Below are positions 4,807-56,847 of a stretch of DNA of 64,000 nt, in pieces. The DNA lies in contig NW_005434665.1 in the NCBI RefSeq assembly GCF_000315625.1, positions 384,848 to 448,847 on the forward strand. The letters run 5' to 3'. This DNA is from Guillardia theta CCMP2712. Its lineage: Eukaryota > Protista > Cryptophyta. Each line of letters starts with the position of its first letter. Position 1 is the first letter of the stretch. The notes beneath the pieces are model-generated. The model made no database searches. It was given only the letters and a program-made list of their open reading frames with translations, and was not told the DNA's origin. The position numbers and the translations under genes were made by a program.

Positions 4807-5031
<225 letters not shown>

Positions 5032-5287
5032 TAGTTGATAAACACACAAAGGAAGAGAGAGAATGATTGTTCTCCAAGAAGAAAGCAAGGCATGATGATT
5101 TGTGCAACCCCTTCAGATTATTGATTGATTCTTTCATAGAGCAAGAGAAAGGGTTTTGGAAGACTCAATACTGCAGAGAGGCTATAGTTGAACTGTCAAT
5201 GATGGAACTGATGTATTTTTTTTCACGTCTGTAGGTCTTGAAATATTGGGCCATGATCTCATCTACTACTATCATCGCTGTTTGAGA

Positions 5288-7893
5288 ATGCCTGTCGGAA
5301 TTATCCCCCAACGGGGAGGGGTGAAAACCTCCAACGAACGAGATGAGCCAAAGTCGCAGAATGGCTTTGCCAACAGCGTCATGAGCAGCGTTGGGGTCTA
5401 CACGCGTGAGAGAAGATCCATCCACAGCTTTCGCCTCAAAGAGCCGGAGACTCCGAGGACTGGACGACCTTCTAGTCGGGCGTTGCGGGCGCCAACCCCG
5501 AAATTCAACGAGAAGGAGAGGAGTCTCATCGACCATCTGGACCAGCAGACGTATGAGGAGCTACAGAACTTGAACAGCAGGCTGCAAGAAGCGAAGTCGA
5601 GGCATCTTCTTGAAATCAAGAAAGCGAGTGAGGAAAAGATAGAAATGGAGAGAGAGCTGGAAAAAACCTTGATGCAATTGTCCAATGCAAAGCAGAAAGG
5701 TCAGGATATCATGCAATCGCTCAAGAACGACAGGAGATTTCTGTCCACAGTCATGCTCAAGTACAAGACTCTCATCTCCAAGTTCGAGGCTCAGAAGCTG
5801 ATGGCAGATCTAACAGACACAGAGGAGATTTCTTCTCTACGGCAAACGCTGGCAGACCTTCGAGCTCAGATGTCTCAGGCTCAGAGTTTGGCAAAGATCC
5901 TCAAGAACTTGGAGCAAACAAAAGTAGAGGCGAGCGAGCTCGCAAACCTCCTCTACTTTCACAAGGTAGACCTCGCACTTGTTCAGGCGGGGACCCGCAA
6001 GGCCATAGCAAAGGCGCAACTGCACAAGAACTCTCTTTTCCAGGCTCTGATTGAACTTGAAAAACGCATGCTGTCCGCAAAGCGGGACAGGGAGAGGCGC
6101 CTGACAGATCTCGTCGAATCCAGGAAGCTAACGAAACAGATGTCCATCGACGTGGAGGCTGAAGAGGAGGAGATCATCAGAAAGGAGATCTCGTGGTTGA
6201 GGGAGCAGCTGGACGATAGGGAAGGGAGTCTTTCCTCTTCCCCTGTCACTTCCACTGCGAACGTGAAGTCTGTCTCGGGGGACACCCTCCCGAACAGCCC
6301 GGGAGCGGAGGCCGGGTCCTCCCAGTACAAGTCTCAGATGACAATCCTCAAGCAACAGGTCGAAGGACTCGAGAAAGAGATCGCAGCGATAGGAGGTGAC
6401 AACGTCTGGTCCAAGTCTCTTTCCTCCAGCCCAGGTAGAGCTGGAAAAATCCGGCCTAGGCCCAGGACTGCCCATCTGCATGGAGACGATCGCTCGCAGA
6501 GCAACGAGGAGAGGGTGGCGAGGCTACAGGATCACCTTCTGAGGATCAAAGAACAAATCAGGAAGACAGAAAGCAACTTGGATAAGGAGCAGCAGGAGAG
6601 AGAGGCAGAGGAATACTTTCGCAGTCAGAACTCGGGGATCAGAGCGACGCTGAATATGGAGGCTCTGAATGATGAGAAACGGAAGATCACCGAAGACATT
6701 GAATGGTTTGAAGAACTGCTGGACAAAGCGGCCAATTCTGACAATGAGTCTTCGAACCGAATCACCAAGCTGCAAGAGCTACTGGAAAATGACCCGAGTC
6801 ACAGGAATATCTCGTCATCTATGGGCCAGGACGATCTCGCAAGTTGTAGACAAGACCTCAAGTCTGCTCTTATCTTAACAGAAGGAATCAACAACGATCT
6901 TCTTGAACAAGTTACGACGATGCAGCAGGATCAAGTTATGCATAGAATCTCAAGCTCTGAGTCAGGAGACAACGTCGGGTCGGGAGAAGATGGTGCTGGT
7001 GACGGGGTCTGTCTGACGACAGCGGGTGACAACTTCGGCGGCGCTAGCAAACGATCGGAAGGGAAGAAAGCTTCAGGTTGGCTATCGTTTACTATCATCA
7101 GACGAGTTGACGTTGAAGTTTTGATGTGAAAGACTCGAAAGAGACAGGTTACATGGATGCGCTGACTGCACAAGAGAAATCTTTGCTCCGCGAGGAGGTG
7201 AGCAAACGACGAGGAACGAGTTTCGAATTGATTTCTCGGCAGATCATGAGGGTCGAGATCGCTAGAATCCGTGAAGAGGTTCAGAGAGAAGAGGACAAGT
7301 TGAGAGAAGAGATTCGTGAGAAACTACGACGGAGGATTGAGATGGAGGAGGAGGAGAAGATGCAAAAGAACTCTTCCAGGAGGAACGTCAAGAAGGAAGA
7401 GACGCCTCGTGGCCTCCAGGTCTCTCCTAATCTTCTCTTGTACGACCTTCTCATGCTCACTCAGATGAAGTCGGCCCTTACCTCCGGTGATCCTAAGCAG
7501 AAGAAAGAGGTAATCCTCCTCCTCCACCACCACCATTGTACCCGCCTCCTCTTCTGCTTCCCTTCACTCCTATCTCCTCTCCTCTCCCTTAAGATTTTCT
7601 TCACTGTGCAGGTAGAAGACTATGCTGCCTACCTTGGGATCGACGCACAGCAGGAGCCTGAGTACCTCTGGATCGCCGAGATGGCGCTCATGGCGCCCCT
7701 TCCACCCGGCTGGACGGAGAACAAGGACTCGACAGGGAACGTCTTCTTCCACAACAGGTCACACCTCTCATCTCCTTCCTCTCCTCCTGATGATGCTGCA
7801 AGGTCCATGAGCTTGAGCTCATACGAACACCCTCTTGACCCAGCCTTCAAGTCATACTACAAGAAGTTGAAAGCTGCTCAGAGCAGCAACTGA
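5288..7893 (+). CDS. Long coiled-coil protein with C-terminal CEP164-type WW module
   Basis: Coiled-coil ORF 5246-7129 is joined by an intron (~7076-7148) to ORF 7126-7893. The C-terminus YAAYLGID...EYLWIAE.AL.APLPPGW.E..D..G.VFFHN...SSYEHPLD matches the CEP164 WW signature. Confidence 0.7.
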
Positions 7894-11622: not shown

Positions 11623-14600
11623 TCACAGCTGGACAGACGGCGAAGCCCGAGGCGGGTCGTGAAAAATCCTCCCGATGTTTGTCGCCATGCTAGGCCGGCG
11701 AGGGAGAGAAGCAGGGGAGGTGACCCCTAGACGCCCGTTAGCACAACATGGCTCGGGAACGAGCCATTGACCATGGATACGAACAAGAGGAAAAGAGTAA
11801 ATGCCAGTGAATCCATTTGTGTACCTAAGACGATTAGTTAGGGTGCCCATCCATTTTCCTACATTCTCTACTGTACAGCGAGAGCTTAAATCTTCGTCAA
11901 CTATCAGATGTGATCGCTGCCTTCCTCCTCTGAGGTAGTGTTGAATCCAACACGTACTGAAAGGGCTGCGGCCATAGGAATCCAACGCTCCCGAGGTAAA
12001 GGGGCTCCCAGGAAGGAGGAAGAAACTGATTTCTTGTCTTGAGGGGGAACTATCAGGGCAAATAGCAGCAAACGAGGTGGGCTTACTTCAGTGTCCAGCC
12101 ATAGCTTGCTCGCTTGGAAAGCCGACGAGCTGGTGTGAGAGACGACAGCATAGTCAAGCTGCTTCAGCAAGACATCGTCATCTGCGAAACCATCAGACTA
12201 GAGTATCAAGAAAGAAACTCTGACTAGCCTCCTTGTTCCACTGTGACACCCTCATGCCCAACGTTGCTCAGTCTGGAGACTGCAGGACCAAGAATCATGT
12301 CCGGCATCTGTCCTGTCTGGGATTGAGAGAGATCAGAATTCATTGGAGAGCGATATTGGTAAAACCTGCGCAAGATGAAACAGTGACCAGTCCCATCCAT
12401 CGGGAAAGAAGTCAAAGTCGCTTCTCTTGATGTGCAAGTACCTGCATGATAGAAACAGCAGAGGAATGAGTTCGAGGACGCATACTCGGTATGCGCTCAC
12501 GTCGTTCGATTGAACGCTATCCCCGTGTTGATGAAAGTATGGCTCCTGCAAAGTTTCCACGCGTCCTGTTCGGTCACACCAGCATCTCCCGGCATGCATG
12601 CCCAACGAACGGTGACTCCCCAACATCTGGGGCAAGCTTCCCTCTTAAGGACGAGGAGATGATCAAGTAGGAGGAGATAGTCTGGGGTGACAACATGGTC
12701 TTCTTCCAGGAGCGCAATGTCACCATCCCATGCCTTCGTCTCGGGAACACTGTTCCAGAGCATGTCTTGCAACCAGATCCAGTGAAGCTGCAACCAGACG
12801 TCAGGAGACGAAAACAGGTCGAAACCTCCCTCCTGTCCACCTTGACAGCGAGGATCGGATGGTTCTTGATCAGATCCTCATTCACTGGGTGAAAGATGAT
12901 CCGCAGGGGAGCGAAGTCGACGCTCAGAGCAATCTCAATCATCTCTGCATGCACGCTGTCCATCGACACCACGATGACAACCGAGTCTTCTATCCTCTTC
13001 ACAGCCTTGAGTCCCTCTATCACCGCACGAAAATATTTCGGCCGCTCATGCACGTAGATGGCTATGGGAACCATCCGGCGGTCGGATGATTGAGAGCTGA
13101 GCCCCAGCAGAGGAGCCTTCTCGTTCCACTCGCTCTGGAGCCTCGCAAGCACTCGACCCACCTGCATGCAGGAATCTGGTCCTCCAACATCCGACCTGAA
13201 GGTCCGAGCGTCTTCAGAGAAACAATCAACAAGCTCTTGGGGGATCTTGAGCGCATGTGCCTGCATCAGGTTTGCCAAAATTTCAATCTTGCTCCTCCAT
13301 GCTTGTACGCTAGCCGGTTCCATCCTCGAGGCAATGTTAGTCCTTCGTTCTTCTGATTCTAATAGGCCAGTGGTCAATGCCTCCCATGAGGTTTCTTTTG
13401 AGGCTACTCTTCCTACCGTTCTGCGATCAGGAAAGCGTCCAAGCTTGGAAATGTATTCCCTCGTGACATTCCGAAGATGCGTTTCATATAGAGACACGGA
13501 ATCATCAGACAGCTGAGGGTTTGAGGTAGACAGAGCAAACTCAGTCTGTAGATAAAGTTTGTACGGGTAGCTGCTACATTCGAACACCCCGTTATCTTCA
13601 CAGCCGGACCTATCACACCATCTCCCTTGCCAGTAGGAATCATTTGCATCCTTGACATGGGAGCACTCTTCGTACGATCTCTTCAAAGACTCCAGGATAG
13701 TCAGAGCTCTCTTTCGCAGTCCTACCCCATAAAGATACTCTTCTGAGCTCTCAAATTCTCGTCTTAGCTCAGCTTCTGTCAGTTCCTTATTCACGATATG
13801 TCGAGCATAACCAGCCAGTCCTTGAGCATCTGGTTCCCGTCCTAGTACTTGTCGGTACAACATTTGGACAGACTTTCTTGCAGGCCCACACAACTCCTCC
13901 CCGCCTTTGAGGCAGAGATTCTTATATTCCTCAGACTCTTGAAGGATCGAACGGAGCTTCCGCACATGAAGCCCATCGTGCAACTCATTCCCGTAGCTCT
14001 GTACTCCTGAGGGGTCAACAGGACGGAGCAAAACATCCAGAAACATAGACTCCACCACATTTCTAGCCTTTGACGTGCAGGGTGCCGTAGAGCACTTGGT
14101 TCTATACTCGTCTGTGGCTCGGAGTTCTTGGGCCAGGTTTCTGTAGCCTTTCCCGTCTTTCATGTCAGCCACGAAAGCATCAGACTCTGAACTAGATGGC
14201 TCTCTTGCTAAAACAAACAGGTAGGCGTCTTTCGCACATGCCATCAAGAATCTCTCTAGGTGCGACCAAATTTTGGACTTTGCGGACTGAACTTCCAGTC
14301 TGAGGGCGTCCGAGTAGGATATATCGACAAGCATCTCCTCTGATCCGGTTGAGTTTGCGCAAACTCTCCAGAATTCGGGGCTGCAATCCAGCGATGCCGA
14401 GCACATTTCAGAGTTCTCGTCAGTCTCTGAGAACGACTTCAGGTCTGCATCCTCGACATAGGACTCGACCACTTGAATAATCGTCTCAGTGTCTATCTTG
14501 CTGCGTACAGATAGAAAGCTCGCCAGGTGACGAGAAAGCTCGAGCTTCAGCAAGTCTGCCCTGTGCTCCGTCAGTACGTCAGTGGATCCTACAGTCGGGA

Positions 14601-15202
14601 TCTGAGAAGCGATTCGTTGCCATCTTTCAATCTTGGTCAGGTCCAGCGTTCTCTCCAAGAAAGCAAAAATTCTCGAACATTCGTTGTGGTTGACGGAGTG
14701 AGCTAGGTTGGCATCTGAGTCCTGGCACTCGAACCCTGCCTGCCTCACAAAGTGCTCAGCAGAATGCCTCGGCCGGTGGCACACAGAAAGACAGAACGTG
14801 AGCGTAACGGTCAGGGCAATTCTACTCACATGGCGCAAGGTGGAGCAGTAGGAGAACTCTGAACGACTCTGAAATCCCGCCAGGGTCGCGTCGCCATGCG
14901 CGACTTCTGGTCCCAGCGATGCTTCAAAGGTTTTGCCTTCATCAAGATAAATGGCAAGACTTCTGCCAAAAGAGCAGCGGCACGTCACCTATCAGATAGC
15001 GGAAGTCCACCGGGGTCCCTCGCTTGCAAGTGCTCCATCGTATCTCTGCCAGCAGCTTCCTTGCACTGGTGGGAATCGAACTAGAAGAGACCAGGCAGGA
15101 AAGCAGCATTAGCAGCCGGACATCGAGGACCACGATCCCAGTGGACTTTCCACGGAGTGGCTGCCGGCTTCGTCGGGCATACATGCCTGTTTGATGTCCC
15201 AT
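11623..15202 (-). CDS. MGAT2: Type II membrane GT16/MGAT2-like N-acetylglucosaminyltransferase with DUF4214-like repeats
   Basis: IYVHERPKYF, VVSMD, K.HW.W, LLEEDH..TPDY, NTGIAFNR and WDWSL match GnT-II (similarity only, orthology not shown). Repeats such as LYRQVLGREPDAQGLAGY...FESSEEY. N-terminal hydrophobic segment. Confidence 0.75.
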
Positions 15203-15610
15203 ACAGGCTTTCAGTCTCAGCTGCTTGTCTGAAGCTCTTATCTCCCGTAGTCGTATCTTTTCTGTGTGGCACAGCTTCTTCAATCCGCCCTCGTCATCTC
15301 AAGAGTGAACTCGGCAACTCCGTGTCTTACTGGCGTGTCCTGCCATGGCTCCACTGCGTCCGGTCATGGCAGTCTTCGCCATCGGATAATCTGACCTCGC
15401 TCACCATAGCCATCTACTTTGCCGCTCATTTCTTTTTATGGACTGAAAAAGGAAAGGCAAACCGGAGCAAACAAGGAGGAAAAGGAGAAAACCTCAGCCT
15501 ACAAATCCGCCTCAAGAAAAAAAACAGGAAACGGAGGAGGCAGCAAATTGAAAACCGCTACTCCAACCACGCAAGCGACCGTACGGCATGCAAGACACAG
15601 TCACGGGCAC

Positions 15611-15676
15611 GCCGGCGGCCCGCCGGGCACAGCCTCCTAACTCGCCGGCGGCCCGCCGGGCACAGCCTCCTAACTC
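15611..15676. repeat. 33-bp perfect tandem duplication in a GC-rich island
   Basis: gccggcggcccgccgggcacagcctcctaactc occurs twice in tandem. Confidence 0.9.
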
Positions 15677-16267
15677 GCCGGCCGGCCGGCCTGCGACGGC
15701 GACCGTGACGGACTGGGCCGACAGTGGGCGCCCGGCGCGGCGCCCGGCCCGGCACCGGGGGCCGCCGCCGGAGGCTCGCGGTCGGAGTCAGTGATCCAAC
15801 TAGGCCCCCCAGCCTTCAAAGTACCATCGTGATCATTTATTTACTAATTAGCAGCGGCTGAGCCTAGCGGTGCCCGGCCCCCCCCGGACCGGGCCCCTCG
15901 GCCAGCCTCCGACGAGCTCGGAGCTCCGAGCGGGCCCCCCGATCCGATGCCACGGATCCGGCGCCGGCCCGGGAACCGGGCCTCAAGCCGGGCCCGGCCG
16001 CGGGGCAGTGTCAGTACTAGTACTATGCCGGCCCGGCCTGGCCTGGCCTGGCCGGGGAAGTTCAGCGAGCCTCGAGGCTCCGAGACTCAGAGAACGGCCG
16101 CGACCTCAGTGAATGCGCCCCGGGCCGAGCCCTGTGCCCCTGCGGGCCGCCGCTTCTGCCCCCCGGCCAGCCTGTGTGTGGCGTCTGATCCTCGAGTTAA
16201 AATTAGACTTTTAATGAATCGCTATAAAATCGACCGGTGTCCGTGTGATTTGCAGTTCGCCACGCCC

Positions 16268-16467
16268 CAGCGCTTACGGAGATAAGCAAAGAGACTTACG
16301 GAACTTACAACTCAGTACGGAACCTAAGTTAGGATTTACAGAACTCAGAACTTACGGAACTCAGAACTTACGGAACTCAGAACTTACGGAACTTACGGAA
16401 CTTCGAACCGTCCGTTACGGAGTACGGAACTTCCGAACTTACGGCTTTACAACTTATTTTTTTTTAG
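16268..16467 (+). repeat. AACTTACGG/AACTCAG short direct-repeat array, copy 1
   Basis: 10 TACGG cores and (AACTCAGAACTTACGG)x3; ends in a T-tract plus AG. Confidence 0.92.
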
Positions 16468-16525
16468 CCTGCCAGCATCGATCCCTTCCTCCTTGTCCCC
16501 CTGCCTCCTACCTGTGTACTGCTCC

Positions 16526-18973
16526 ATGCAAGCCCCTCCTGCTACCCCCTCCATGGCCCGCAACAAGCGTGACGCCATCTATCGCATCCTCGCTCAGATG
16601 AAGCAAGACGGCATCAACATATCTGACCTGGAGGCGTGCCGCTCTCACGGGGCGAGCTCGACGACCTCGGACATGGAGGACGCATGCTCAGCTCAATCTG
16701 ACTCCTCCCCGTCCCTCTTGGCCTCCCCAGTATCGTTGGATGACAGCCCGCTCCCACGTGGCCAAAGTCTCCCCAAGCGGTCGCGGAAGCGGACGCGGGC
16801 GACCATGGACTCTGACGATGAGACTGGGAGCGTCCAGTCTACCTCGGTTCAGCTTAAGGCTCGGCGTTCGCTCGCGCACGACTTTGCCAGCCACTCCCCT
16901 TCGGACGAGGTGCTTGGCTCTCAGGATGAAGGCAAGGACGACGAGAACGACAGCGAAGGACCGAGCACAGCTCGTGTACCGCTCAGCACTGCGGCAGAAG
17001 ATGTCCAGGCTAGCCTCGCGTCCAGCATCTCCATTGACATGGACGAGGTTGAGCTGGTAGACACCTTCATGCGCCTCATCTTCCCTTCCGACGACCTCGC
17101 AGCTTCGGCCAAGCGGAGCAGGTATCGCTTCGATGTCCGACAGGCCATCCAGTATCAGGTCCGCAAGCTGCAGTCTGCGCGGACAGGCGGTCGCTGGAGG
17201 AGAGACATAGACCCCTCGCCAAACGGAGACATGCCCGAGATCATCGCGGGAGGCGTGACACAGAACGGCAAGACCCTCATCAAGGTCCTCGCCATCGTCG
17301 TCGGGCATCTTCTCGGCGTCTCCTCCATCATCGTCTCCACCACCAGGAGCGGCACCAGCTCTCTTAGCAACAAGATCGAGAGGTACCTCCTGCGCGACCT
17401 GCATCCGAAGCTTCAGCCCACCATCAAGCACATCTGCGAGCTCGATGCTCGCAAGCACGGGCCCGAGCCCATGTGCAACTTCCTGCGCAAGCATGGCTGC
17501 CTCTTCATTAACGACACGGCGAGACAGCTTTACAACGCCTCGCACACCATCCAGAGCGCCCGATCCTGCGCTCACCTGGGCGAGGACTTCCCATGCCAGC
17601 TCATCCTGGACGAGGCTGACTCCTACTACCGCAACAGCTCTGACCCGATCCAGCTCGAGAAGGCCCTCGCTGACCTCCACCAGCAGGTCAAGCCAGTCCT
17701 GCGCTGGAGCGTCTCAGCGACCTTGATCCCGGTCTTCCTTCACCTCAAGGACAAGAAGTTTGGTCTAGACTCTGACTCCATCATCTACACCCAGCCCGAC
17801 CACACCTACGTCGGCGTGCGCGACTTCAAGCCCCTGCAGATCGACGGCAAGAATCAGTTCCTCATGCCCAAGGACCTCAAGCCCGCCAACCTCTACTCCA
17901 ACCACCTCACCGACGAAGTCATCCGCCAGGCCGTCGACAAGCCTTGCTCGCTCACCCTCGTCATCACCAACCCGCGCGTCGACGCCGCCAACAATGTCTT
18001 CGAGCTCGCCAGGCGCATCCAGAACTCCTATCCCCGCGTCGCTGCCTTGATCGTCGTCGGGCGGGGCCGCTTCTACATGCCCCCGCCTCAGCCGCGACTG
18101 CCCGAGGACAGCATAGCCCCTCCGCCGGCATATGTGATCAGGAGGATGGACGTGTCGGCTTTGATTGAGGCGATCGACGGCCACGTGGGCCTTGAGACGC
18201 CGCTGGTGGTCCTCGGCTACTCTCAGATGATCCGCGGCGATACCTTCAGGAGCAACAGGCGGGTGCCCACCCACATCATCTGCGCGCTTGGCCGCGCCAT
18301 GAGCATCGAGAAGATGGTCCAGGCCATGGGGCGAGCGAGCTACCAGGACAGCAAGCTCGAGGACAACGGCTTCCAGCACGTCACCGTCCTCACGTACCCC
18401 CAGGACTTTGACTCGGCGCAGGCCTATCCGCAGTGGCTGGCGGAGATGCAGCAGAAGCTCCAAGAGGGCATGGGGATCAGCGAGGCCACGTCACGTTTGG
18501 CCACCTACTCGGACCGAGCCAACGTGATCTTCCGTCAGAACAAGCCCATCGGGCAGCGCAACGACAACCTGAGGCTTGAGACAAGCTTCGAGGACCCCGA
18601 GCCTGGCTGTGAGCGCCCAGGAAGAAAGTTTCTAGACCGCCTGCATGCCGAAGACCCAGTGCTTCAGACGCTGCGCGCAATCGCGATCGAAAACCGGGAG
18701 ACCAGCGAGACCTTCAAGCAGGAGCTGGTGGATTACAATTACAAGGGCACAGGCATGACGGCCAAGGAGTTTGCCGACGCTTACAACGAAAGAATCGGCG
18801 AAGGCTCCCGTCACGTGACCGTACAAGCCATCACCTGCAAGCTAGGGAAGCTGGTGGACAACGGCGTACTCGAGAGGTCCAAGGGGCGTCGGGTGCAGCC
18901 CACGAGGTACTGGATCGCGAGTAAGGAGCTGCTACAGCCGAGCACGGTGAGGGCGATGATGTCGAGCGAGTAA
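16526..18973 (+). CDS. Intronless SF2 helicase/ATPase of Z1-domain type with C-terminal winged helix, copy 1
   Basis: Motif I GGVTQNGKT, II LILDEAD, III SVSAT, Y..P...YVG, V GYSQMIRGDTF, VI MVQAMGR. C-terminal MTAKEFAD...LGKLVDNGVLER...RYWI. ATG at 16526 or 16553. Confidence 0.8.
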   Translation: MQAPPATPSMARNKRDAIYRILAQMKQDGINISDLEACRSHGASSTTSDMEDACSAQSDSSPSLLASPVSLDDSPLPRGQSLPKRSRKRTRATMDSDDETGSVQSTSVQLKARRSLAHDFASHSPSDEVLGSQDEGKDDENDSEGPSTARVPLSTAAEDVQASLASSISIDMDEVELVDTFMRLIFPSDDLAASAKRSRYRFDVRQAIQYQVRKLQSARTGGRWRRDIDPSPNGDMPEIIAGGVTQNGKTLIKVLAIVVGHLLGVSSIIVSTTRSGTSSLSNKIERYLLRDLHPKLQPTIKHICELDARKHGPEPMCNFLRKHGCLFINDTARQLYNASHTIQSARSCAHLGEDFPCQLILDEADSYYRNSSDPIQLEKALADLHQQVKPVLRWSVSATLIPVFLHLKDKKFGLDSDSIIYTQPDHTYVGVRDFKPLQIDGKNQFLMPKDLKPANLYSNHLTDEVIRQAVDKPCSLTLVITNPRVDAANNVFELARRIQNSYPRVAALIVVGRGRFYMPPPQPRLPEDSIAPPPAYVIRRMDVSALIEAIDGHVGLETPLVVLGYSQMIRGDTFRSNRRVPTHIICALGRAMSIEKMVQAMGRASYQDSKLEDNGFQHVTVLTYPQDFDSAQAYPQWLAEMQQKLQEGMGISEATSRLATYSDRANVIFRQNKPIGQRNDNLRLETSFEDPEPGCERPGRKFLDRLHAEDPVLQTLRAIAIENRETSETFKQELVDYNYKGTGMTAKEFADAYNERIGEGSRHVTVQAITCKLGKLVDNGVLERSKGRRVQPTRYWIASKELLQPSTVRAMMSSE

Positions 18974-19792
18974 TGCAGATATCGTATCGTTTGTGTGAGC
19001 CAGGCTTATAGAAGTAGCCTCGGATCTTCAAGGCTTGGCATGTTGTCTTGATTAAGAGTGTAATACCGGGTGTGTAATGAAGCCTCTGAAGTGTGTCAAG
19101 ACCTGCTCATCGCTGAGTGACCGTGCCGCGGTCACGGTGCCACCGGATTATCCGATGGCGAAGACTGCCATGACCGGACGCACCATAGCCATCTACTTTG
19201 CCGCTCATTTCCACCTCCACACAAACGTTTCACTCAATATTCAACATAAATTTATATCACTTGTGCTGCCCGCCCCGGCCCGGGCCGGGCCCCGGGCCGC
19301 CGGAGCCGGGCCCGGCGGTGACCGTCACCGTGCTAAGGGCAGTCACGGGCACGCCGCCGCCGCCGCCGGCCCGCCGGGCACACTGGCAGCCGGGGCCTGC
19401 CCGGCCTGCGACTCACCGACAGCGGGCGCCCGGCGGGCCCTGTCGCTCGCGGGAGTCCGTCATTTATTTACTAAGTTAGCAGCGGCTGATGAGCCTAGCG
19501 GTGCCCGCGGCCGCCAGCCTCCGACTCCGAGCTCAGTGCCGGGGCACCCCGACCCAAGCCTCGCACTGGCAGTCAATGAGTACCGTACCATCCCCGGGCC
19601 GGGCCGGGGAAGTGGCAGCGAGCCTCGGAACGGCCGCGACCTCAGTGAATGCGCCGCCCCAGTGTGCCCCCGGCGGCGGGCCCTTCTTCTGCCCCCAGGT
19701 GAATGGCGTCTGATCCTCGAGTTAAAATTAGACTTTTAATGAATCGCTATAAAATCGACCGGTGTCCGTGTGATTTGCAGTTCGCCACGCCC

Positions 19793-19992
19793 CAGCGCTT
19801 ACGGAGATAAGCAAAGAGACTTACGGAACTTACAACTCAGTACGGAACCTAAGTTAGGATTTACAGAACTCAGAACTTACGGAACTCAGAACTTACGGAA
19901 CTCAGAACTTACGGAACTTACGGAACTTCGAACCGTCCGTTACGGAGTACGGAACTTCCGAACTTACGGCTTTACAACTTATTTTTTTTTAG
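19793..19992 (+). repeat. AACTTACGG/AACTCAG array, copy 2
   Basis: Same sequence as 16268-16467. Confidence 0.92.
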
Positions 19993-20050
19993 CCTGCCAG
20001 CATCGATCCCTTCCTCCTTGTCCCCCTGCCTCCTACCTGTGTACTGCTCC

Positions 20051-22501
20051 ATGCAAGCCCCTCCTGCTACCCCCTCCATGGCCCGCAACAAGCGTGACGC
20101 CATCTATCGCATCCTCGCTCAGATGAAGCAAGACGGCATCAACATATCTGACCTGGAGGCGTGCCGCTCTCACGGGGCGAGCTCGACGACCTCGGACATG
20201 GAGGACGCATGCTCAGCTCAATCTGACTCCTCCCCGTCCCTCTTGGCCTCCCCAGTATCGTTGGATGACAGCCCGCTCCCACGTGGCCAAAGTCTCCCCA
20301 AGCGGTCGCGGAAGCGGACGCGGGCGACCATGGACTCTGACGATGAGACTGGGAGCGTCCAGTCTACCTCGGTTCAGCTTAAGGCTCGGCGTTCGCTCGC
20401 GCACGACTTTGCCAGCCACTCCCCTTCGGACGAGGTGCTTGGCTCTCAGGATGAAGGCAAGGACGACGAGAACGACAGCGAAGGACCGAGCACAGCTCGT
20501 GTACCGCTCAGCACTGCGGCAGAAGATGTCCAGGCTAGCCTCGCGTCCAGCATCTCCATTGACATGGACGAGGTTGAGCTGGTAGACACCTTCATGCGCC
20601 TCATCTTCCCTTCCGACGACCTCGCAGCTTCGGCCAAGCGGAGCAGGTATCGCTTCGATGTCCGACAGGCCATCCAGTATCAGGTCCGCAAGCTGCAGTC
20701 TGCGCGGACAGGCGGTCGCTGGAGGAGAGACATAGACCCCTCGCCAAACGGAGACATGCCCGAGATCATCGCGGGAGGCGTGACACAGAACGGCAAGACC
20801 CTCATCAAGGTCCTCGCCATCGTCGTCGGGCATCTTCTCGGCGTCTCCTCCATCATCGTCTCCACCACCAGGAGCGGCACCAGCTCTCTTAGCAACAAGA
20901 TCGAGAGGTACCTCCTGCGCGACCTGCATCCGAAGCTTCAGCCCACCATCAAGCACATCTGCGAGCTCGATGCTCGCAAGCACGGGCCCGAGCCCATGTG
21001 CAACTTCCTGCGCAAGCATGGCTGCCTCTTCATTAACGACACGGCGAGACTGAAGCTTTACAACGCCTCGCACACCATCCAGAGCGCCCGATCCTGCGCT
21101 CACCTGGGCGAGGACTTCCCATGCCAGCTCATCCTGGACGAGGCTGACTCCTACTACCGCAACAGCTCTGACCCGATCCAGCTCGAGAAGGCCCTCGCTG
21201 ACCTCCACCAGCAGGTCAAGCCAGTCCTGCGCTGGAGCGTCTCAGCGACCTTGATCCCGGTCTTCCTTCACCTCAAGGACAAGAAGTTTGGTCTAGACTC
21301 TGACTCCATCATCTACACCCAGCCCGACCACACCTACGTCGGCGTGCGCGACTTCAAGCCCCTGCAGATCGACGGCAAGAATCAGTTCCTCATGCCCAAG
21401 GACCTCAAGCCCGCCAACCTCTACTCCAACCACCTCACCGACGAAGTCATCCGCCAGGCCGTCGACAAGCCTTGCTCGCTCACCCTCGTCATCACCAACC
21501 CGCGCGTCGACGCCGCCAACAATGTCTTCGAGCTCGCCAGGCGCATCCAGAACTCCTATCCCCGCGTCGCTGCCTTGATCGTCGTCGGGCGGGGCCGCTT
21601 CTACATGCCCCCGCCTCAGCCGCGACTGCCCGAGGACAGCATAGCCCCTCCGCCGGCATATGTGATCAGGAGGATGGACGTGTCGGCTTTGATTGAGGCG
21701 ATCGACGGCCACGTGGGCCTTGAGACGCCGCTGGTGGTCCTCGGCTACTCTCAGATGATCCGCGGCGATACCTTCAGGAGCAACAGGCGGGTGCCCACCC
21801 ACATCATCTGCGCGCTTGGCCGCGCCATGAGCATCGAGAAGATGGTCCAGGCCATGGGGCGAGCGAGCTACCAGGACAGCAAGCTCGAGGACAACGGCTT
21901 CCAGCACGTCACCGTCCTCACGTACCCCCAGGACTTTGACTCGGCGCAGGCCTATCCGCAGTGGCTGGCGGAGATGCAGCAGAAGCTCCAAGAGGGCACG
22001 GGGATCAGCGAGGCCACGTCACGTTTGGCCACCTACTCGGACCGAGCCAACGTGATCTTCCGTCAGAACAAGCCCATCGGGCAGCGCAACGACAACCTGA
22101 GGCTTGAGACAAGCTTCGAGGACCCCGAGCCTGGCTGTGAGCGCCCAGGAAGAAAGTTTCTAGACCGCCTGCATGCCGAAGACCCAGTGCTTCAGACGCT
22201 GCGCGCAATCGCGATCGAAAACCGGGAGACCAGCGAGACCTTCAAGCAGGAGCTGGTGGATTACAATTACAAGGGCACAGGCATGACGGCCAAGGAGTTT
22301 GCCGACGCTTACAACGAAAGAATCGGCGAAGGCTCCCGTCACGTGACCGTACAAGCCATCACCTGCAAGCTAGGGAAGCTGGTGGACAACGGCGTACTCG
22401 AGAGGTCCAAGGGGCGTCGGGTGCAGCCCACGAGGTACTGGATCGCGAGTAAGGAGCTGCTACAGCCGAGCACGGTGAGGGCGATGATGTCGAGCGAGTA
22501 A
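20051..22501 (+). CDS. Intronless Z1-type SF2 helicase-wHTH, copy 2
   Basis: Same motifs as copy 1; two protein-level differences. Confidence 0.8.
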   Translation: MQAPPATPSMARNKRDAIYRILAQMKQDGINISDLEACRSHGASSTTSDMEDACSAQSDSSPSLLASPVSLDDSPLPRGQSLPKRSRKRTRATMDSDDETGSVQSTSVQLKARRSLAHDFASHSPSDEVLGSQDEGKDDENDSEGPSTARVPLSTAAEDVQASLASSISIDMDEVELVDTFMRLIFPSDDLAASAKRSRYRFDVRQAIQYQVRKLQSARTGGRWRRDIDPSPNGDMPEIIAGGVTQNGKTLIKVLAIVVGHLLGVSSIIVSTTRSGTSSLSNKIERYLLRDLHPKLQPTIKHICELDARKHGPEPMCNFLRKHGCLFINDTARLKLYNASHTIQSARSCAHLGEDFPCQLILDEADSYYRNSSDPIQLEKALADLHQQVKPVLRWSVSATLIPVFLHLKDKKFGLDSDSIIYTQPDHTYVGVRDFKPLQIDGKNQFLMPKDLKPANLYSNHLTDEVIRQAVDKPCSLTLVITNPRVDAANNVFELARRIQNSYPRVAALIVVGRGRFYMPPPQPRLPEDSIAPPPAYVIRRMDVSALIEAIDGHVGLETPLVVLGYSQMIRGDTFRSNRRVPTHIICALGRAMSIEKMVQAMGRASYQDSKLEDNGFQHVTVLTYPQDFDSAQAYPQWLAEMQQKLQEGTGISEATSRLATYSDRANVIFRQNKPIGQRNDNLRLETSFEDPEPGCERPGRKFLDRLHAEDPVLQTLRAIAIENRETSETFKQELVDYNYKGTGMTAKEFADAYNERIGEGSRHVTVQAITCKLGKLVDNGVLERSKGRRVQPTRYWIASKELLQPSTVRAMMSSE

Positions 22502-23056
22502 TGCAGATATCGTATCGTTTGTGTGAGCCAGGCTTATAGAAGTAGCCTCGGATCTTCAAGGCTTGGCATGTTGTCTTGATTAAGAGTGTAATACCGGGTG
22601 TGTAATGAAGCCTCTGAAGTGTGTCAAGACCTGCTCATCGCTGAGTGACAGTGCCGCGGTGCCACCGTGAGCTCGTCCGGCGGAGCCTGCGGGCCCTGAG
22701 GCCCACTGGAGTCCCCATAAGTGCACGAGCTACCAAGCTGCGGGCCCGCCTCAATTTTGAGGGATCATTGTTTGGGTTCCCGGCTCAAAAGGTTGAGCAA
22801 TACCCCAGGGGGTGGGGTGAGAGGTTCTTCACCCTCTACCGGGTCCTTTCCCTCTTCCGCATACGGTCATCCCGTCTCTCGGGGTACAGGTTGCCGATAG
22901 AGGGGGTACTGAGGGAGTCAGGTGGGGCAAAAGCTCTCCAAACTTCTACAAACAAGGTCACATTGCTCCTCTGCCTTCCTCCTCCTCGAGTCTCCCTGCC
23001 TGCCAGTGTCGATCCCTTCCTCCTTGTCCCCCTGCCTCCTACCTGTGTACTGCTCC

Positions 23057-23563
23057 ATGCAAGCCCCTCCTGCTACCCCCTCCATGGCCCGCAGCAAGCG
23101 TGACGCCATCTATCGCATCCTCGCTGAGATGAAGCAATACGGCATCAACATATCTGATCTGGAGGCGTGCCTATCTCACGGGGCGAGCTCGACGACCTCG
23201 GACATGGAGGATGCATGCTCGGTCCAGTACTGCTTTCCTGATGAAAATCTGCTCAAGCGGTCGCTGAAGCGGATGCGGGTATGTTTAGACTCTGAGGACG
23301 AAGTGTTCATCTTTGAGGATGAAAGCGAGGATGGCGAGGACGACAGTGAAGAGTCAAGCACAGCTTGTGCGCCGATCAGTACTGCGGCAGGAGATTTCCC
23401 GGTTGGACTCGAAAACGACGTCGAGCTGGTAGACACCTTCATGCGCCTCACCAACCGGCTCCGAGGCTGTTGCCAAGCGGAGCAGGTATCGCCTCGATGT
23501 CGGACAGGCCATCCAGTATCAGGTCTGCAAGCTGCAGTCTGTGTCATGGCAGGACAGCAATGA
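23057..23563 (+). pseudogene. Truncated, diverged third copy of the helicase gene (N-terminal part only)
   Basis: MQAPPATPSMARSKRDAIYRIL...VELVDTFMRL matches copies 1 and 2. After ~23450 nucleotide homology continues in a shifted frame and ends before motif I. Confidence 0.85.
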
Positions 23564-26900: not shown

Positions 26901-28432
26901 TTTCTTTGACGCAGATGAGCCGCAAGGTGACGGGAGAGAAGAGGAAGAGACGAGACGAGACGAGCAGCAGGGAGCAGAGGGAGAGGAGGAGGAGACGACA
27001 GAGCTCCAGAGGGGAGCATAGCAGGGAGGAGGGCAAGGAATGGGATGTGGAAAGGAAATTCATGTAATTCCATCTCAGGTCCATACAAGCTTGACATGTC
27101 AAAAGAATATTCAAGAAAGGTGTACTTGAGAATCTGACAAGAAGCACTTCTCTTCTCCTCCATTTTCCTTCCCCCACTCTTTTCATCTCACGTCGTCCAA
27201 TCAGGTTTTGAAGTCTCTCCTCAAGCTCCAGATGCAGAAGGCAGGCAGCGTAAGTTCCTCCTCCTCGTTGTTCGTTTCCTCACTCCTGATGAAACAAGTT
27301 CTGTCCGGGAATGCTCCTCAACGACAAACCGTACAAGCTGGACACCGGAAGAGCCTCACAAAGTGACTTGTACGAGACAAGCGAAGGTGAGGGAGGGAGG
27401 GAGGGAGGGAGGGAGGGAGGGAGGGAGGGAGGGAGGGAGGGAGGGAGGGAGGATACTTGCCTTTCTACCTTCTCATTTCACTGCAGAAGGTCAGAAGAAC
27501 AAGAGCTCCATGCCCACTAGCGGCATCCTCACCTTCGAGGTGATGCTCGATCCTCTTCCCCTCCACGTTTGCTTCCGACTTTGATAACCTCGGAATGCAT
27601 ATCAACCCTGCCCCCCCCCCCCCTCTCTCTTTCCCCTCCCTCGCTCCCTCGCTCCCTCCCACTTTCTCCCTCTCTCCCTCTCATCTTCAACCCTGTCTGC
27701 TTCCTCTCTCTCTCTCTCCTCCCCTCCCCCCATCCCTTCCACCTGTCACGCTCAGCTGCTGCAGTTTGCGAGCTACAGGAAGCCTCCTGCTGGTCGTCAC
27801 TTTGGCGACGTCAACACAGCTGGGGATCAGCTGCAGCAGGCGTCGATGCTGAAACTTTGCGACTTCTTCGACGGCAGGAAGTCGCTGGAGGTTCCCGTCG
27901 CTTCCTTCCAGCCTTCGCCTCATGCATGTGCTGCAGGAGACGAAGGAGCTGCTGGAAGCTCTTCTCAAGGGGTACTGCCTCCCTCCCTCCCTCCCTCCCT
28001 TCCTCATTCCTCTTCCCTCCCTTCCTCATTCCTCCTCCCTCCCTCCTGCCTTCCTCCTGCCTCCTTCCCTCTTCCCTTCGCTTCTTTCTCCGTCCCCTTT
28101 CTGCTGCTCCCCACCGACAGCACTCGCAACAGGGTCTACCTCAGCGCAGCTCAAGCTGCGAAACTCCTAGGACTGCTGTCGGACTCCGAGACCAGGTCCC
28201 ACCCTCCCCTTGCTCTTCTTCGTCCCCTGCTCCCGCGCCTTCTGCTTCTTGCATCCTCCCCAGTCTCCTTCTGGCAAGCTCACCCTCCCCTTTTGCTTCC
28301 TCCTACCGATCTCGAACGTTCTCTGAATCCTCCCCCAGGGTTTACTTCGCCTGCTTCGCGTTCCTCCATATCTCCGACAGCGCACAATCCTCTCTGCTGA
28401 CCAATGAGCTCACAGGGGTACCACGTCCTCGT

Positions 28433-28464
<32 letters not shown>

Positions 28465-29251
28465 ACTCCCTCTCTCCGTCGCCCACCTCCTCTCCCCATG
28501 CCAATCTTCCTCTTCCTGCTCGCTCCTCCTTCCATCTGACTCCTTGCTCTTGAAAGCTTCATCCCCTGTCCTGCTCCGTCCCTCTTGTTTCTCACCTCTC
28601 CACTGACTCTTTTCGCCCATCAGTTCGAGGCGATTCGTTTCGCCATCAGGATCGGGAAGAAGCGACTAGAATTCACACGTGAGCTGAATCATCTTCATGC
28701 TGAGCATGTGATGACGTCGAGTTCTCGCTCTCCTTCCCCTCTTGCTTCCCCTCCTCCTGCTCCCTCTCCTCTTTCTGCTCCTCCTCCTCCGTCTCTCCTC
28801 CTCCTCCTTCCCCTCCTCCTCCTCCTTCCCCTCCTCCTTCCCCTCCTCCTCACTCTCCTTCTCTCTCTCCTCTTCCTCCTGCAGCAAACAACCCAACAGG
28901 GCATTATTCCCTCCACCTGGACAGACCGCAGGATCGAGTGAGATGCTTCATGTCCTTCTTAATCTGCACATTCTGCTGTGACTTTCTCTTTCCATCTGAT
29001 CGTCTGTTTTCCTGGCAGGCGATAGCACTTGATCTGATCTACTTCAAGAATCTCGTTCGCCTGAAAAGCTTGCAACCTGTTCTTGACTGTGAGGCAGGAG
29101 ATGACGTTCGAGGACGAAGAGTTCAAGAAGTCGAAGACGAAGAAAGGGGGGGAGCGAGTCAATTTTGATCGCGTGTGGAGGAACTGTTATTACAACCACA
29201 AGGTTGTAAACGAAATCTCGATTTGACGCTGTTGTGGTTGACAAGAACGTT

Positions 29252-55045: not shown

Positions 55046-56847
55046 GGCAGATTTGAGGAGCCCTAAAAACTAACAGGAATATTATGAAGCTGCAGTACAA
55101 CGAGCCAGTACCGCATAGTGTATTTATCCCCTACTACCTCTAATCTTGTACCGCACTTATTTAATTACCCTCCAAAACAGTTACAAGCCGTTTCAAAACG
55201 TCTTCCTTCCAATCTCGATTCCCCACTAGATTTACTCAAAGTTAAGTTAAAGATCAGTACGAGGACCAACAATCGTCCTGACCCCTGACTTGAGTAATAA
55301 TTCAACGGAGAATCCCGAGTCACCGCCCTCCAACCCACGGGCCTCGGAGCAAAAGATATTTTCCGGCCGGAGGTACATTTCTTTTATACCTTTATATATT
55401 TTATACTCACTTTTTTGGAGCTCATGTGCGCATGTGCCCCGGAAGGCCCATGACTCAAAATCTCGCCGATAGGGACCCCCTCATCTCCCTTTGACCACCC
55501 CCATGTTTTATAGGCTCGGAACATAGGCTCCGCACGGAGCCTCCGGGCAATGGTGCTAAAAGCAATGCGCCGTGCCATCGGGCGATATTTCGGAAATGGC
55601 CGGTTCCTGCTCGACTGACAACCCCAGGGGTCGTCAAACTCGTAGGTTATTAGTGGGGTGGTAACTTCTTCGGGAGGCGGCCGAAACAGAACGTTTCGGT
55701 TGACCCCTGTAGTCACAAGCGGATGAATCCGAAAAAGGAGATATTCGATACCCAGGTACAGAAAACAGAAAATCGATTTTAAACATTTTCCTCCGGTACT
55801 ATGAGTTTTACTCAAGTAATCCTGTTCTTGTCTTGGAATTATTTCAAATTATTCATGATAGTTTCAATTGTTCCAGCGAACAAACCTGACTTTTCTCCGA
55901 ATACTGATGCTACAGTGACGTGATTTGCTGACGCACCACAAGATATGATCATTATAATCCTCTACCGAGACTCCGAAGACACCTACCCCACCCATTCTGT
56001 CCTGATGTTTGCTGTACAGAGACCTCCTTCAAATGGCGATAGATCTATGATATGGCAAATCATGTACTTCCTTCAATTATGAAATATCTGACCTCCATTG
56101 TTCTTTCAACGCTGTGTCCCCAATGAACGTCAGGAGGGGTACCAAACATGTTTGAAATCAAGGGCATCGGATGCTCCGATTGCCCTACCATGAAAAGTAC
56201 CTACCTGCGGACCCTTTCCCCTTGTCTACCCGTACTTATCAGTCTAAATACCCCACCCTAATCACCAAGATTCCACTACCACCCCGTACCTTTGAAAAAT
56301 CACGATTTTTTTAACTTATCACCTCTCATTTGGAAGTTTGACGACTACCCCCACCCTCAACGACGCAAAAACACCCCTGTCCACCCCACCCTCGGAAAAT
56401 CTTGGTACCGCACCCTCTCATGTCAGCGTATCGTGCTGTTTACCACACGAAATGACCACCCACCCCTTGACACCCACTTAGTATGATCGTGTGCTTCCAA
56501 GACACCCCCACCACCTCTTGTGTGATATCCATCTTTTGGACCCACCCCTCATCGTGATATCCACCATGTCTCTCAATATCCGTACCCTACCCGTTTCTAT
56601 CCTCCCTATTGACTTCCATCTGTACCCCAACCCCTTCCTACCCTGCCCCCGTCCCCCCTTCCCGCCCTGCGTGCACTCGCATACCTGTCCTTGCTCCTCC
56701 TCCTCCTCCTCCTCCTCCTCCTCCTCCTCCTCCTCCTCCTCCTCCTCCTGCTCCTGCTCCTGCGCCGCTGGACCTTCAATATCCCGTCTTCTCCATTCCA
56801 GCCTCGTATCTGTGCGGCGAGGTTCTCTCGGCGGGTATTTTGCGATC

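What the first reader, a model, noticed from the sequence alone, without database searches (positions are those of the whole stretch)
15355..23563. Tandemly amplified cassette: iteron-like array plus intronless Z1-type SF2 helicase with winged helix; candidate undescribed selfish or virus-derived replicon
Seen: a ~3.5-kb unit is present as two near-identical copies plus a decayed third. It is intronless among intron-rich genes and has a repeat array directly upstream. Known: the GxxQxGKT / DEAD / SAT / YxG / RGxTF / QxxGR motif set resembles Z1-domain SF2 helicases of prokaryotic restriction-type operons and, from recollection, related giant-virus ORFs, rather than eukaryotic DEAD-box RNA helicases. 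Inference: an SF2 ATPase with a C-terminal DNA-binding module beside direct repeats parallels origin plus origin-binding helicase modules (e.g. herpesvirus UL9). The unit may drive its own amplification, or be a captured defence or viral gene. No transposase or nuclease domain was recognised.
Basis: partly seen in the sequence, partly recalled or inferred. Interest (0 to 1): 0.88.

Follow-up and report, generated by a model that had tools for sequence, protein, structure and literature searches.

The report
Tandem-duplicated orphan helicase gene, cryptophyte alga
Two almost identical neighbouring copies, plus a short broken fragment, of a gene in the alga Guillardia theta encode an uncharacterised helicase-type ATPase with a DNA-binding winged helix; the family is also found in other algae, a chytrid and giant-virus-like DNA, and the locus looks like an ordinary local gene duplication, not a self-replicating element.

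Summary
The window is Guillardia theta CCMP2712 nuclear DNA. A roughly 3.5-kb unit occurs twice. The two copies differ by 4 mismatches and one 3-bp indel over about 2.96 kb. A third piece is only a broken 0.57-kb 5' fragment. Each full copy has an uninterrupted 815/816-codon ORF. About 80 bp upstream of each ATG lies a 170-bp array with 10 TACGG cores.

The protein is a confident SF2 fold: two RecA domains plus a C-terminal winged helix. All ATPase motifs are conserved, and the Walker A motif has an unusual Q.

The replicon reading is not supported:
- The array is private to these two copies. It is absent from 4 other G. theta loci and from 16 metagenomic loci with upstream DNA.
- The three cryptophyte subfamilies each pair Guillardia with Hanusia.
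- One paralogue pair has dN/dS 0.19.
- No transposase, integrase, capsid gene or terminal repeats were found.

Membership of the Z1 family is not shown. There was no PF10593 hit in 79 members, and motif VI is the ordinary QxxGR. Only the Walker-A Q matches.

A giant-virus link is partly supported. The best structural matches are proteins of algal giant viruses, and one family member sits on a contig with an NCLDV-type capsid gene.

Verdict: an ordinary tandem duplication of a member of an undescribed helicase family. Interest is moderate to low.

The parts
15345..15432 (.). Left-edge junction motif of unit 1. It has a 47-nt arm that is inverted relative to 19146-19192, followed by a 41-nt direct repeat of 19171-19211.
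   Evidence: the repeat finder I1 and D6
15433..16080 (.). GC-rich spacer 1, which contains a 33-bp x2.5 tandem repeat at 15610-15691. It aligns only in patches with spacer 2.
16081..16525 (+). Upstream region of copy 1. TATAAAA lies at 16223-16229 and a T9 run lies just after the array.
   Evidence: sequence read; identity to copy 2
16275..16444 (+). Repeat array 1: 10 TACGG cores, 7 of them as TACGGAAC. TRF reports 9-nt and 16-nt periods; TACGGAAC start-to-start spacings range from 9 to 37 nt. All cores are in one orientation. The array ends 81 bp before the ATG.
16526..18973 (+). Helicase gene copy 1 (GUITHDRAFT_102061-type), an uninterrupted 815-codon ORF. Layout: a low-complexity N-terminal region with a basic cluster (about residues 1-235); RecA1 (about 238-421, nt 17237-17788); RecA2 (about 429-624, nt 17810-18397); a linker; and a helical plus winged-helix module (about 698-800, nt 18617-18925).
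18974..19145 (+). 3' flank of copy 1, duplicated after copy 2. The NCBI model places a 57-nt intron and an alternative stop here.
19146..19211 (.). Left-edge junction motif of unit 2
19212..19618 (.). GC-rich spacer 2
19800..19969 (+). Repeat array 2, matching array 1 in TACGGAAC count (7), spacing and TRF units; at most 2 mismatches lie in the surrounding 351 bp.
20051..22501 (+). Helicase gene copy 2, 816 codons. Its ORF differs from copy 1 by 1 mismatch and one 3-bp indel.
22502..22665 (+). 3' flank of copy 2. Homology to the flank of copy 1 ends here.
22998..23563 (+). Broken third copy, a 5' fragment only. It corresponds to the short leader and about the first 230 codons. A DNA alignment gives about 15 indel events (about 190 nt net loss), and there is at least 1 frame change at protein level. 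The helicase core, the winged helix and the array are all missing.

Best explanation
The locus is a local tandem duplication, by unequal recombination or replication slippage, of a resident nuclear gene of Guillardia theta. The two full copies are kept nearly identical either by a very recent origin or by gene conversion. The third piece is the remnant of an older, partial duplication.

The gene belongs to an uncharacterised SF2 ATPase family that has no Pfam model. The predicted protein has a disordered N-terminal region with a basic, NLS-like cluster. This is followed by a two-RecA motor with intact Walker A (with Q in place of the usual G), DE-x-D, S/T-A-T and QxxGR motifs. A C-terminal winged helix would hold the motor on nucleic acid, most likely duplex DNA.

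I infer that it is a nuclear, nucleic-acid-dependent ATPase or translocase. The family is old in cryptophytes, duplicates repeatedly, and has been exchanged at some time with large DNA viruses of algae. The TACGG array is a minisatellite private to this gene. It lies in the promoter or the 5' leader and was duplicated along with the gene. It may carry cis-regulatory sites, but it is not a replication origin.

Shown: the duplication, the fold, motif conservation, the taxon distribution, the privacy of the array, and purifying selection on one paralogue pair. Inferred: nuclear localisation, the DNA substrate, the mechanism of duplication, and any regulatory role of the array.
For: - Identity of the window: 100% match to GUITHDRAFT_102061 on a 1.14-Mb scaffold. 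The 90% cluster has 2 members on 1 contig, and both copies are annotated.
- Near-identical gene parts against diverged spacers.
- Fold: pLDDT 90.5, pTM 0.90. All 50 listed PDB matches are SF2 helicases or translocases. The C-terminal module matches mostly winged-helix proteins (ORC2 WH, ArsR/SrnR, MarR, Fur, CodY, H1), with TM to the target up to 0.70. The profile gives a weak hit to a wHTH regulator.
- Motifs: invariant G, Q, K of Walker A, D-E-x-D, T of motif III, and Q and R of motif VI in 40 members. Q is present in 73 of 74 Walker A motifs, and QxxGR in 146 of 160 members.
- Family size: 346 representatives at E<=1e-3.
- Named members come from Guillardia, Hanusia, Pavlova, Pavlovales sp., Seminavis, Chaetoceros, Tribonema, Tetraselmis and Batrachochytrium.
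- Three cryptophyte subfamilies each pair Guillardia with Hanusia.
- dN/dS is 0.19 between the G. theta paralogues P0004 and P0005.
- GC3 is 0.82, at the upper end of the range for ORFs in the window (0.51-0.75) and so not AT-rich or virus-like.
- The array is absent from paralogue loci L001-L003 and L036, and from 16 metagenomic loci with upstream DNA.
- No close relative was found in IMG/VR viral contigs.
Against: - The contrast between about 99.9% identity in the gene part and poorly alignable spacers is unusual for a simple recent duplication. It needs gene conversion or a second event, and neither was tested.
- Copy number cannot be verified without reads.
- No biochemical or expression datum exists for the G. 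theta gene itself. Only relatives from other species come from transcriptomes.
- A virus-like contig (L006) also carries a tandem repeat upstream of its family member. An association between upstream repeats and this gene family is therefore not wholly excluded.
- The NJ tree has no support values.
Confidence: 0.68

Rival explanations
1. Selfish or virus-derived replicon. On this reading the TACGG array is an iteron-type origin, bound by the winged helix of the adjacent SF2 helicase, and the cassette drives its own amplification.
For: - There is a dense, one-orientation repeat array beside a gene for an ATPase with a DNA-binding fold.
- The amplification is local.
- The family member on virus-like contig L006 also has a tandem repeat, 43 bp x4.2, about 275 bp upstream.
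Against: - The array is found only at these two copies. It is missing from the broken third copy, from 4 other G. theta loci and from 16 metagenomic loci with upstream DNA.
- No other near-identical copy exists in the assembly. The cluster has 2 members on 1 contig.
- Guillardia and Hanusia proteins pair within each of three subfamilies, and one paralogue pair has dN/dS 0.19.
- No repeats bound the whole cassette, and no integrase, transposase, capsid or polymerase was found.
- TACGGAAC spacings range from 9 to 37 nt, with TRF periods of 9 and 16 nt, so the repeats are not in helical phase.
- No herpesvirus-type origin-binding protein appears among the Pfam hits or the listed fold matches.
Confidence: 0.04
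2. A relic of an integrated large DNA virus (NCLDV or polinton-like), that is, a recently captured viral gene and not an old host gene.
For: - The best BFVD structural matches are Heterosigma akashiwo virus 01 (E 2.7e-15), the unnamed entry M1I2R9 (1e-13) and Chrysochromulina ericina virus (5e-10). These are ahead of generic helicases.
- P0044 lies on a contig with an NCLDV-type MCP (E 1e-33), Bro-N/T5orf172 and three C5 methylases.
- The ORF is uninterrupted.
- The taxon distribution is patchy.
Against: - No viral hallmark gene was found among the ORFs tested in the window.
- No relative turned up in IMG/VR with the cryptophyte-clade patterns.
- The cryptophyte clade is monophyletic, with three subfamilies shared by two genera.
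- GC3 of 0.82 is host-like, not virus-like.
- The member on the viral contig is at most 29% identical to any family member compared.
Confidence: 0.1
3. The duplication is an assembly or haplotype artefact, and only one copy exists.
For: The gene parts are near-identical. No read data are available here.
Against: - The copies differ at 4 sites and by one 3-bp indel.
- They are separated by distinct, only patchily alignable spacers.
- They are followed by a separate diverged fragment.
- There is no N gap in or near the cassette. The only gap in the window is at 50150-50249.
Confidence: 0.07
4. A functional rival that is compatible with tandem duplication. On this reading the family is a eukaryotic and giant-virus branch of the restriction-type DEAD-Z1 translocases, and it acts in virus-host conflict as a dsDNA translocase.
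For: - The Walker A motif has Q in place of G, as reported for DEAD-Z1 (PMC5861437). It is present in 73 of 74 Walker A motifs.
- A nearly invariant Y lies between the two RecA domains.
- Orthologues have diverged to 65% identity within one algal family.
- Duplication is recurrent, and N-terminal fusions vary: B-box, ankyrin, OTU, Tudor.
- C5 methylase genes lie beside the member on the viral contig.
Against: - No PF10593 hit in 79 members.
- Motif VI is the ordinary QxxGR, not QxxR.
- The model shows no long helical insertion in RecA2.
- There is no consistent PADLOC hit.
- No nuclease partner or fusion was found.
Confidence: 0.12

Closest known systems
H.CglI / N.NgoAVII DEAD-Z1 helicase-like motors of restriction systems (Pfam PF10593; PMC5861437, PMC2292703)
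   Same: Both are monomeric SF2 two-RecA motors. Both have the rare Walker A motif with Q in place of G, a DEAD-type Walker B, a conserved Y between the domains, and an extra C-terminal domain.
   Different: There is no PF10593 profile match in 79 members. Motif VI is QxxGR, not QxxR within DThhQxuRhFG. No helical H/H insertion is seen in the model. The C-terminal domain is a winged helix, not the unique CglI fold. No R or M partner genes are present in the window. The setting is a eukaryotic nucleus.
Uncharacterised SF2 proteins of algal giant viruses (BFVD A0A1C9C5C9 of Heterosigma akashiwo virus 01, unnamed entry M1I2R9, A0A0N9QIR2 of Chrysochromulina ericina virus)
   Same: These are the best whole-length structural matches (E 2.7e-15 to 4.6e-10, 451-749 aligned columns). 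The hosts are algae.
   Different: Identity is only 11-13%. The sequences could not be fetched, so sequence-level membership, including the Walker-A Q, is untested.
RecQ-family helicases (BLM, RECQ1, RECQL5, bacterial RecQ)
   Same: These are the top PDB fold matches (E 4e-9 to 2e-7). They share the architecture of two RecA domains followed by a winged helix.
   Different: TM is only 0.3-0.5. There is no RecQ or zinc-binding sequence signature and no Pfam RecQ hit. Walker A and motif III differ.
DEAD-box RNA helicases (eIF4A-III, Has1, Vasa)
   Same: They share DEAD and SAT motifs. PF00270 gives weak hits in 14 of 79 members, and the profile hits Has1 at E 0.011.
   Different: The window protein itself has no PF00270 or PF00271 hit. 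The Walker A motif differs, and there is an extra winged helix and a long disordered N-terminus.
Iteron origins with adjacent initiator genes (plasmid Rep/iteron modules).
   Same: In both, direct repeats lie beside a gene for a DNA-binding ATPase.
   Different: Here the repeats are not conserved with the gene family. The spacing is irregular. The location is chromosomal with vertical inheritance. No named origin-binding protein came back from any search.

Membership tests
Superfamily 2 helicases/translocases | Two tandem RecA-like domains | tested here: met
   AlphaFold model with pLDDT 90.5. At least 500 PDB matches have E<=0.001, and all 50 listed are SF2 enzymes.
Superfamily 2 helicases/translocases | Conserved motifs I, II, III and VI | tested here: met
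   The columns G, Q, K (motif I), D-E-x-D (II), T (III) and Q, R (VI) are invariant in 40 members.
DEAD-Z1 (PF10593) restriction-type motors | Match to the Pfam Z1 profile | tested here: not met
   No PF10593 hit for the window protein at E<=10, for 40 members at E<=1 or for 39 more at E<=0.001. A profile-profile test could not be run.
DEAD-Z1 (PF10593) restriction-type motors | Walker A with glutamine in place of glycine (PMC5861437) | tested here: met
   Q is invariant in A1 and present in 73 of 74 recognisable Walker A motifs.
DEAD-Z1 (PF10593) restriction-type motors | Short motif VI, QxxR, within DThhQxuRhFG (PMC5861437, PMC2292703) | tested here: not met
   QxxGR in 146 of 160 members, and in the window protein.
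DEAD-Z1 (PF10593) restriction-type motors | Alpha-helical insertion with the H/H motif in the C-core | tested here: inconclusive
   DSSP on the model shows no long helical insertion in RecA2. No Z1 structure or sequence was at hand for direct comparison.
DEAD-Z1 (PF10593) restriction-type motors | Neighbouring nuclease (R) and methyltransferase (M) genes | tested here: not met
   None in the window. C5 methylases lie near the member on viral contig L006, but no nuclease was recognised there.
Winged-helix DNA-binding domains | Helix-turn-helix followed by a beta-hairpin wing, with fold matches to known WH proteins | tested here: met
   Sub-model with pLDDT 81 and topology H-H-E-E. Nearly all listed matches are WH proteins, with TM to the target up to 0.70, but E is only 0.02-0.09. 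There is a weak profile hit to 2d1h. DNA binding itself was not tested.
Iteron-type origin with cognate initiator | The repeat array travels with the initiator gene in relatives | tested here: not met
   No TACGGAAC array at L001-L003 or L036, or at 16 metagenomic loci with upstream DNA. Unrelated small repeats occur at a few loci.
Iteron-type origin with cognate initiator | Autonomous or extrachromosomal replication | not testable with these tools
   This needs read-level data.
   No such family in the Pfam scans. None appears among the listed PDB or BFVD matches.
Endogenous NCLDV or polinton-like element | Hallmark genes (capsid, packaging ATPase, polymerase, integrase) in the same block | tested here: not met
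   The cassette ORFs and 10 of the other ORFs of 250 aa or more in the window give only cellular-type domains or none. Shorter ORFs were not scanned.
DNA transposon | Terminal repeats, target-site duplication, transposase | tested here: not met
   No repeats bound the cassette. The only inverted repeat pair lies at the left edges of units 1 and 2. No transposase domain was found.

The most novel reading that the evidence does not exclude
The family would be a previously unrecognised eukaryotic and giant-virus branch of the restriction-type SF2 translocases that carry a Q in the Walker A motif (kin of DEAD-Z1). It would work as a nuclear DNA-tracking motor in alga-virus conflict. Its repeated duplication, as at this locus, and its orthologue divergence to 65% identity within one algal family would reflect that conflict. 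The private TACGG array could then be a target of its own winged helix, giving autoregulation.
Probability: 0.12. Interest if true: 0.6.

Novelty: new variant of a known kind. Interest (0 to 1): 0.33.

Why it matters
The headline idea, a self-amplifying origin-plus-helicase cassette in a eukaryotic nucleus, would have been remarkable, but the evidence does not support it.

What remains is more modest. It is a sizeable SF2 ATPase family that no profile library names, with 346 representatives at 50% clustering. It has a diagnostic Q-substituted Walker A motif and, at least in the cryptophyte clade, a C-terminal winged helix. The family is shared by several unrelated algal lineages, a chytrid and large DNA viruses of algae.

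Defining this family would improve the annotation of algal and giant-virus genomes. It would also give one more marker of gene exchange between algae and their viruses. The Walker-A Q offers a concrete, testable lead to the prokaryotic restriction-type motors.

Tried and rejected
- Profile libraries. Pfam, PADLOC, PHROGs, NCBIfam and the PDB sequence search gave no meaningful hit for the protein or for 40 members.
- Plasmids. tblastn of the helicase core against plasmids, meant to fish out an annotated Z1 protein, gave one chance hit.
- IMG/VR viral contigs. The scan with the diverse alignment failed because it has no conserved stretch. The scans with the closer alignment and with P0044 found no relative.
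- Searching again with the family profile and with P0044 reached no further.
- A gapped TACGGAAC pattern in viral contigs gave more than 100 scattered matches (78 of the 80 listed loci with a single match), which I take for chance. The pattern was too loose to be informative.
- Rfam, the tRNA scan and the bacterial-type promoter/terminator scan found nothing in the cassette.
- No paper mentions these gene identifiers.
- A first tree run timed out and was repeated with a faster alignment.

Slip: the scripts printed alignment-segment bounds for the broken third copy and for the degraded copy in L036. Those bounds bracket frame changes.

For the dN/dS calculation I joined the two annotated exons of P0005 as they stand inside a script. 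I checked that the product equals the database protein.

Full report
**Origin of the window**

The 815-aa product of 16526-18970 is 100% identical over 807 residues to GUITHDRAFT_102061 of Guillardia theta CCMP2712, on a 1.14-Mb nuclear scaffold. The public record annotates both copies (822 and 823 aa), a 144-aa model on the third fragment, and a downstream LRR/zinc-finger gene. The only assembly gap in the window is at 50150-50249, far from the cassette.

**The observation**

- Self-comparison gives 16081-19132 against 19619-22660 at 98.95% identity.
- Most of the differences lie in the first 95 bp. From 16175 to 19132 there are 4 mismatches and one 3-bp indel: 2 mismatches in 351 bp upstream, 1 mismatch plus the indel in the ORF, and 1 mismatch in 159 bp downstream.
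- The DNA to the left of each unit starts with a shared junction motif, one part of which is locally inverted. It continues as a GC-rich spacer that aligns only in patches.
- The third copy (22998-23563) is a 5' fragment. It covers a short leader and about the first 230 codons. A DNA alignment gives about 15 indel events, and there is at least one frame change. The motor, the winged helix and the array are all missing.
- The array holds 10 TACGG cores in 170 bp, all in one orientation. TRF reports 9-nt and 16-nt periods; TACGGAAC start-to-start spacings range from 9 to 37 nt. It ends 81 bp before the ATG.
- TACGGAAC occurs 14 times in the window, all in the two arrays, against 0.61 expected.
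- A TATAAAA lies 46 bp upstream of the array. The array may therefore be transcribed as part of the leader. This is an inference.

**The protein**

No profile library names it. A model built on 40 relatives is very confident, with pLDDT 90.5 and pTM 0.90. It shows two RecA domains, a linker and a helical C-terminal module.

All 50 listed PDB fold matches are SF2 enzymes, such as RecQ/BLM, eIF4A-III, Mfd and UvrB, and none stands out. The C-terminal module was modelled on its own (pLDDT 81). It matches mostly winged-helix proteins, including the ORC2 WH domain, ArsR/SrnR, MarR, Fur, CodY and histone H1. TM to the target reaches 0.70, but E is only 0.02-0.09. The winged helix is therefore supported at fold-class level and not statistically proven.

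Catalytic motifs are invariant in 40 members. The Walker A motif carries Q where SF2 enzymes usually have G, in 73 of 74 recognisable motifs. Motif VI is QxxGR in 146 of 160 members. The first 190 to 235 residues are low-complexity, with a basic cluster that looks like a nuclear localisation signal (inference).

**Z1?**

The literature defines DEAD-Z1 motors by four features (PMC5861437, PMC2292703):
- a Q-substituted Walker A;
- a short QxxR motif VI inside DThhQxuRhFG;
- an H/H helical insertion;
- restriction-type gene partners.

Here only the first is met. PF10593 is not hit by any of 79 members. Motif VI is the ordinary form, no helical insertion is visible, and there are no partner genes. 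I could not obtain a Z1 sequence through the tools, so no profile-profile test was run. Membership is not shown, and distant kinship remains possible.

**The family**

An exhaustive search of 1.84 billion representatives gave 346 proteins at E<=1e-3 and 66 at E<=1e-30. Named members come from:
- cryptophytes (Guillardia, Hanusia);
- haptophytes (Pavlova gyrans, Pavlovales sp.);
- diatoms (Seminavis, Chaetoceros);
- a xanthophyte (Tribonema);
- a chlorophyte (Tetraselmis);
- the chytrid Batrachochytrium salamandrivorans.

Several of these are transcriptome-derived, so relatives are expressed. Most metagenomic contexts look eukaryotic.

One member, P0044, lies on a contig with an NCLDV-type major capsid protein (E 1e-33), a Bro-N/T5orf172 protein and three C5 methylases. 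The best BFVD fold matches are proteins of algal giant viruses: Heterosigma akashiwo virus 01 at E 2.7e-15, the unnamed entry M1I2R9 at 1e-13, and CeV at 5e-10. An old virus-host exchange is plausible, but its direction is open. P0044 is at most 29% identical to any other family member compared.

**Within cryptophytes**

G. theta has two intact subfamily-A copies (this locus), the fragment here, and a degraded subfamily-A copy on another scaffold (L036). It also has two subfamily-B genes and one subfamily-C gene.

Each subfamily has a Hanusia counterpart, at 65%, 71%/63% and 49%/46% identity. The cryptophyte sequences form one clade in a neighbour-joining tree, which has no support values. Guillardia and Hanusia belong to one family, the Geminigeraceae.

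The B paralogues have dS 0.60 and dN/dS 0.19, which indicates purifying selection on this pair. GC3 of the window gene is 0.82, at the upper end of the range for ORFs in the window and not virus-like. The gene models have no intron or one short intron.

**The array and the replicon idea**

The array is absent from:
- the third fragment;
- the four other G. theta loci;
- 16 metagenomic loci with upstream DNA.

A few loci have unrelated small repeats, including a 43-bp x4.2 repeat upstream of the member on the viral contig. No other near-identical copy exists in the assembly. No repeats bound the cassette, and no mobility or viral hallmark gene is nearby. No close relative was found in IMG/VR.

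**Conclusion**

This is a real tandem duplication of a resident gene from an undescribed SF2-plus-winged-helix family. The family has a possible deep link to restriction-type motors and a likely history of exchange with algal giant viruses. The near-identity of the gene parts beside diverged spacers is best explained by gene conversion or a very recent re-duplication (inference).

**Slips and procedure**

The scripts printed alignment-segment bounds of degraded copies that bracket frame changes. I report counts only and do not repeat the bounds. In one search the two annotated exons of P0005 were joined inside a script for the dN/dS calculation, and the product was checked against the database protein.

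Noticed in passing
window 12574-14988 (-): An uninterrupted 804-aa ORF has DUF4214 (E 6e-13) and MGAT2-like glycosyltransferase (E 5e-10) hits. It does not appear among the called genes of the public record around the locus.
   Followed up: partly
window 15345-15432 and 19146-19211: The left edge of each duplication unit carries a 47-nt segment that is inverted between the two units, directly followed by a 41-nt direct repeat. This is a small local inversion at the duplication junction, which may record how the duplication arose.
   Followed up: partly
window 51552-53279 (-): A 575-aa ORF has a SWIM zinc finger (E 1e-7). This domain is common in transposase-derived proteins.
   Followed up: no
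window 56491-59727 (+): A 1078-aa ORF has right-handed beta-helix and NosD repeats. Its GC3 of 0.51 is the lowest of the ORFs compared, so a foreign origin is possible.
   Followed up: no
window 27380-28900, recurring near 31.5, 44.7, 49.3, 50.3, 51.3 and 56.7 kb: There are purine- and pyrimidine-rich low-complexity tracts, (GAGG)16 and CCT-rich runs. They cross-match one another on both strands across the window.
   Followed up: no
L006 2498-2676 and 2951-5644: A virus-like metagenomic contig carries an NCLDV-type capsid gene, Bro-N/T5orf172 and three C5 methylases. It has a 43-bp x4.2 tandem repeat about 275 bp upstream of its member of this helicase family.
   Followed up: partly
L036 (G. 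theta scaffold JH993103), around 5001-6238: A degraded copy of the same subfamily sits on another scaffold. It gives three alignment segments in two frames, the locus contains 200 N, and there is no TACGG array.
   Followed up: partly
P0090 (Batrachochytrium salamandrivorans, KAH9260709.1): A chytrid fungus carries a member of a family otherwise seen in algae (27% identity, E 3e-27). This is an unexpected taxon for the family.
   Followed up: no
Family members P0012, P0133 and others in A1 and A5: N-terminal fusions vary across the family: B-box zinc finger, ankyrin repeats, OTU protease, Tudor, UVR motif and a weak PHD hit. This suggests different recruiting modules on one motor.
   Followed up: partly
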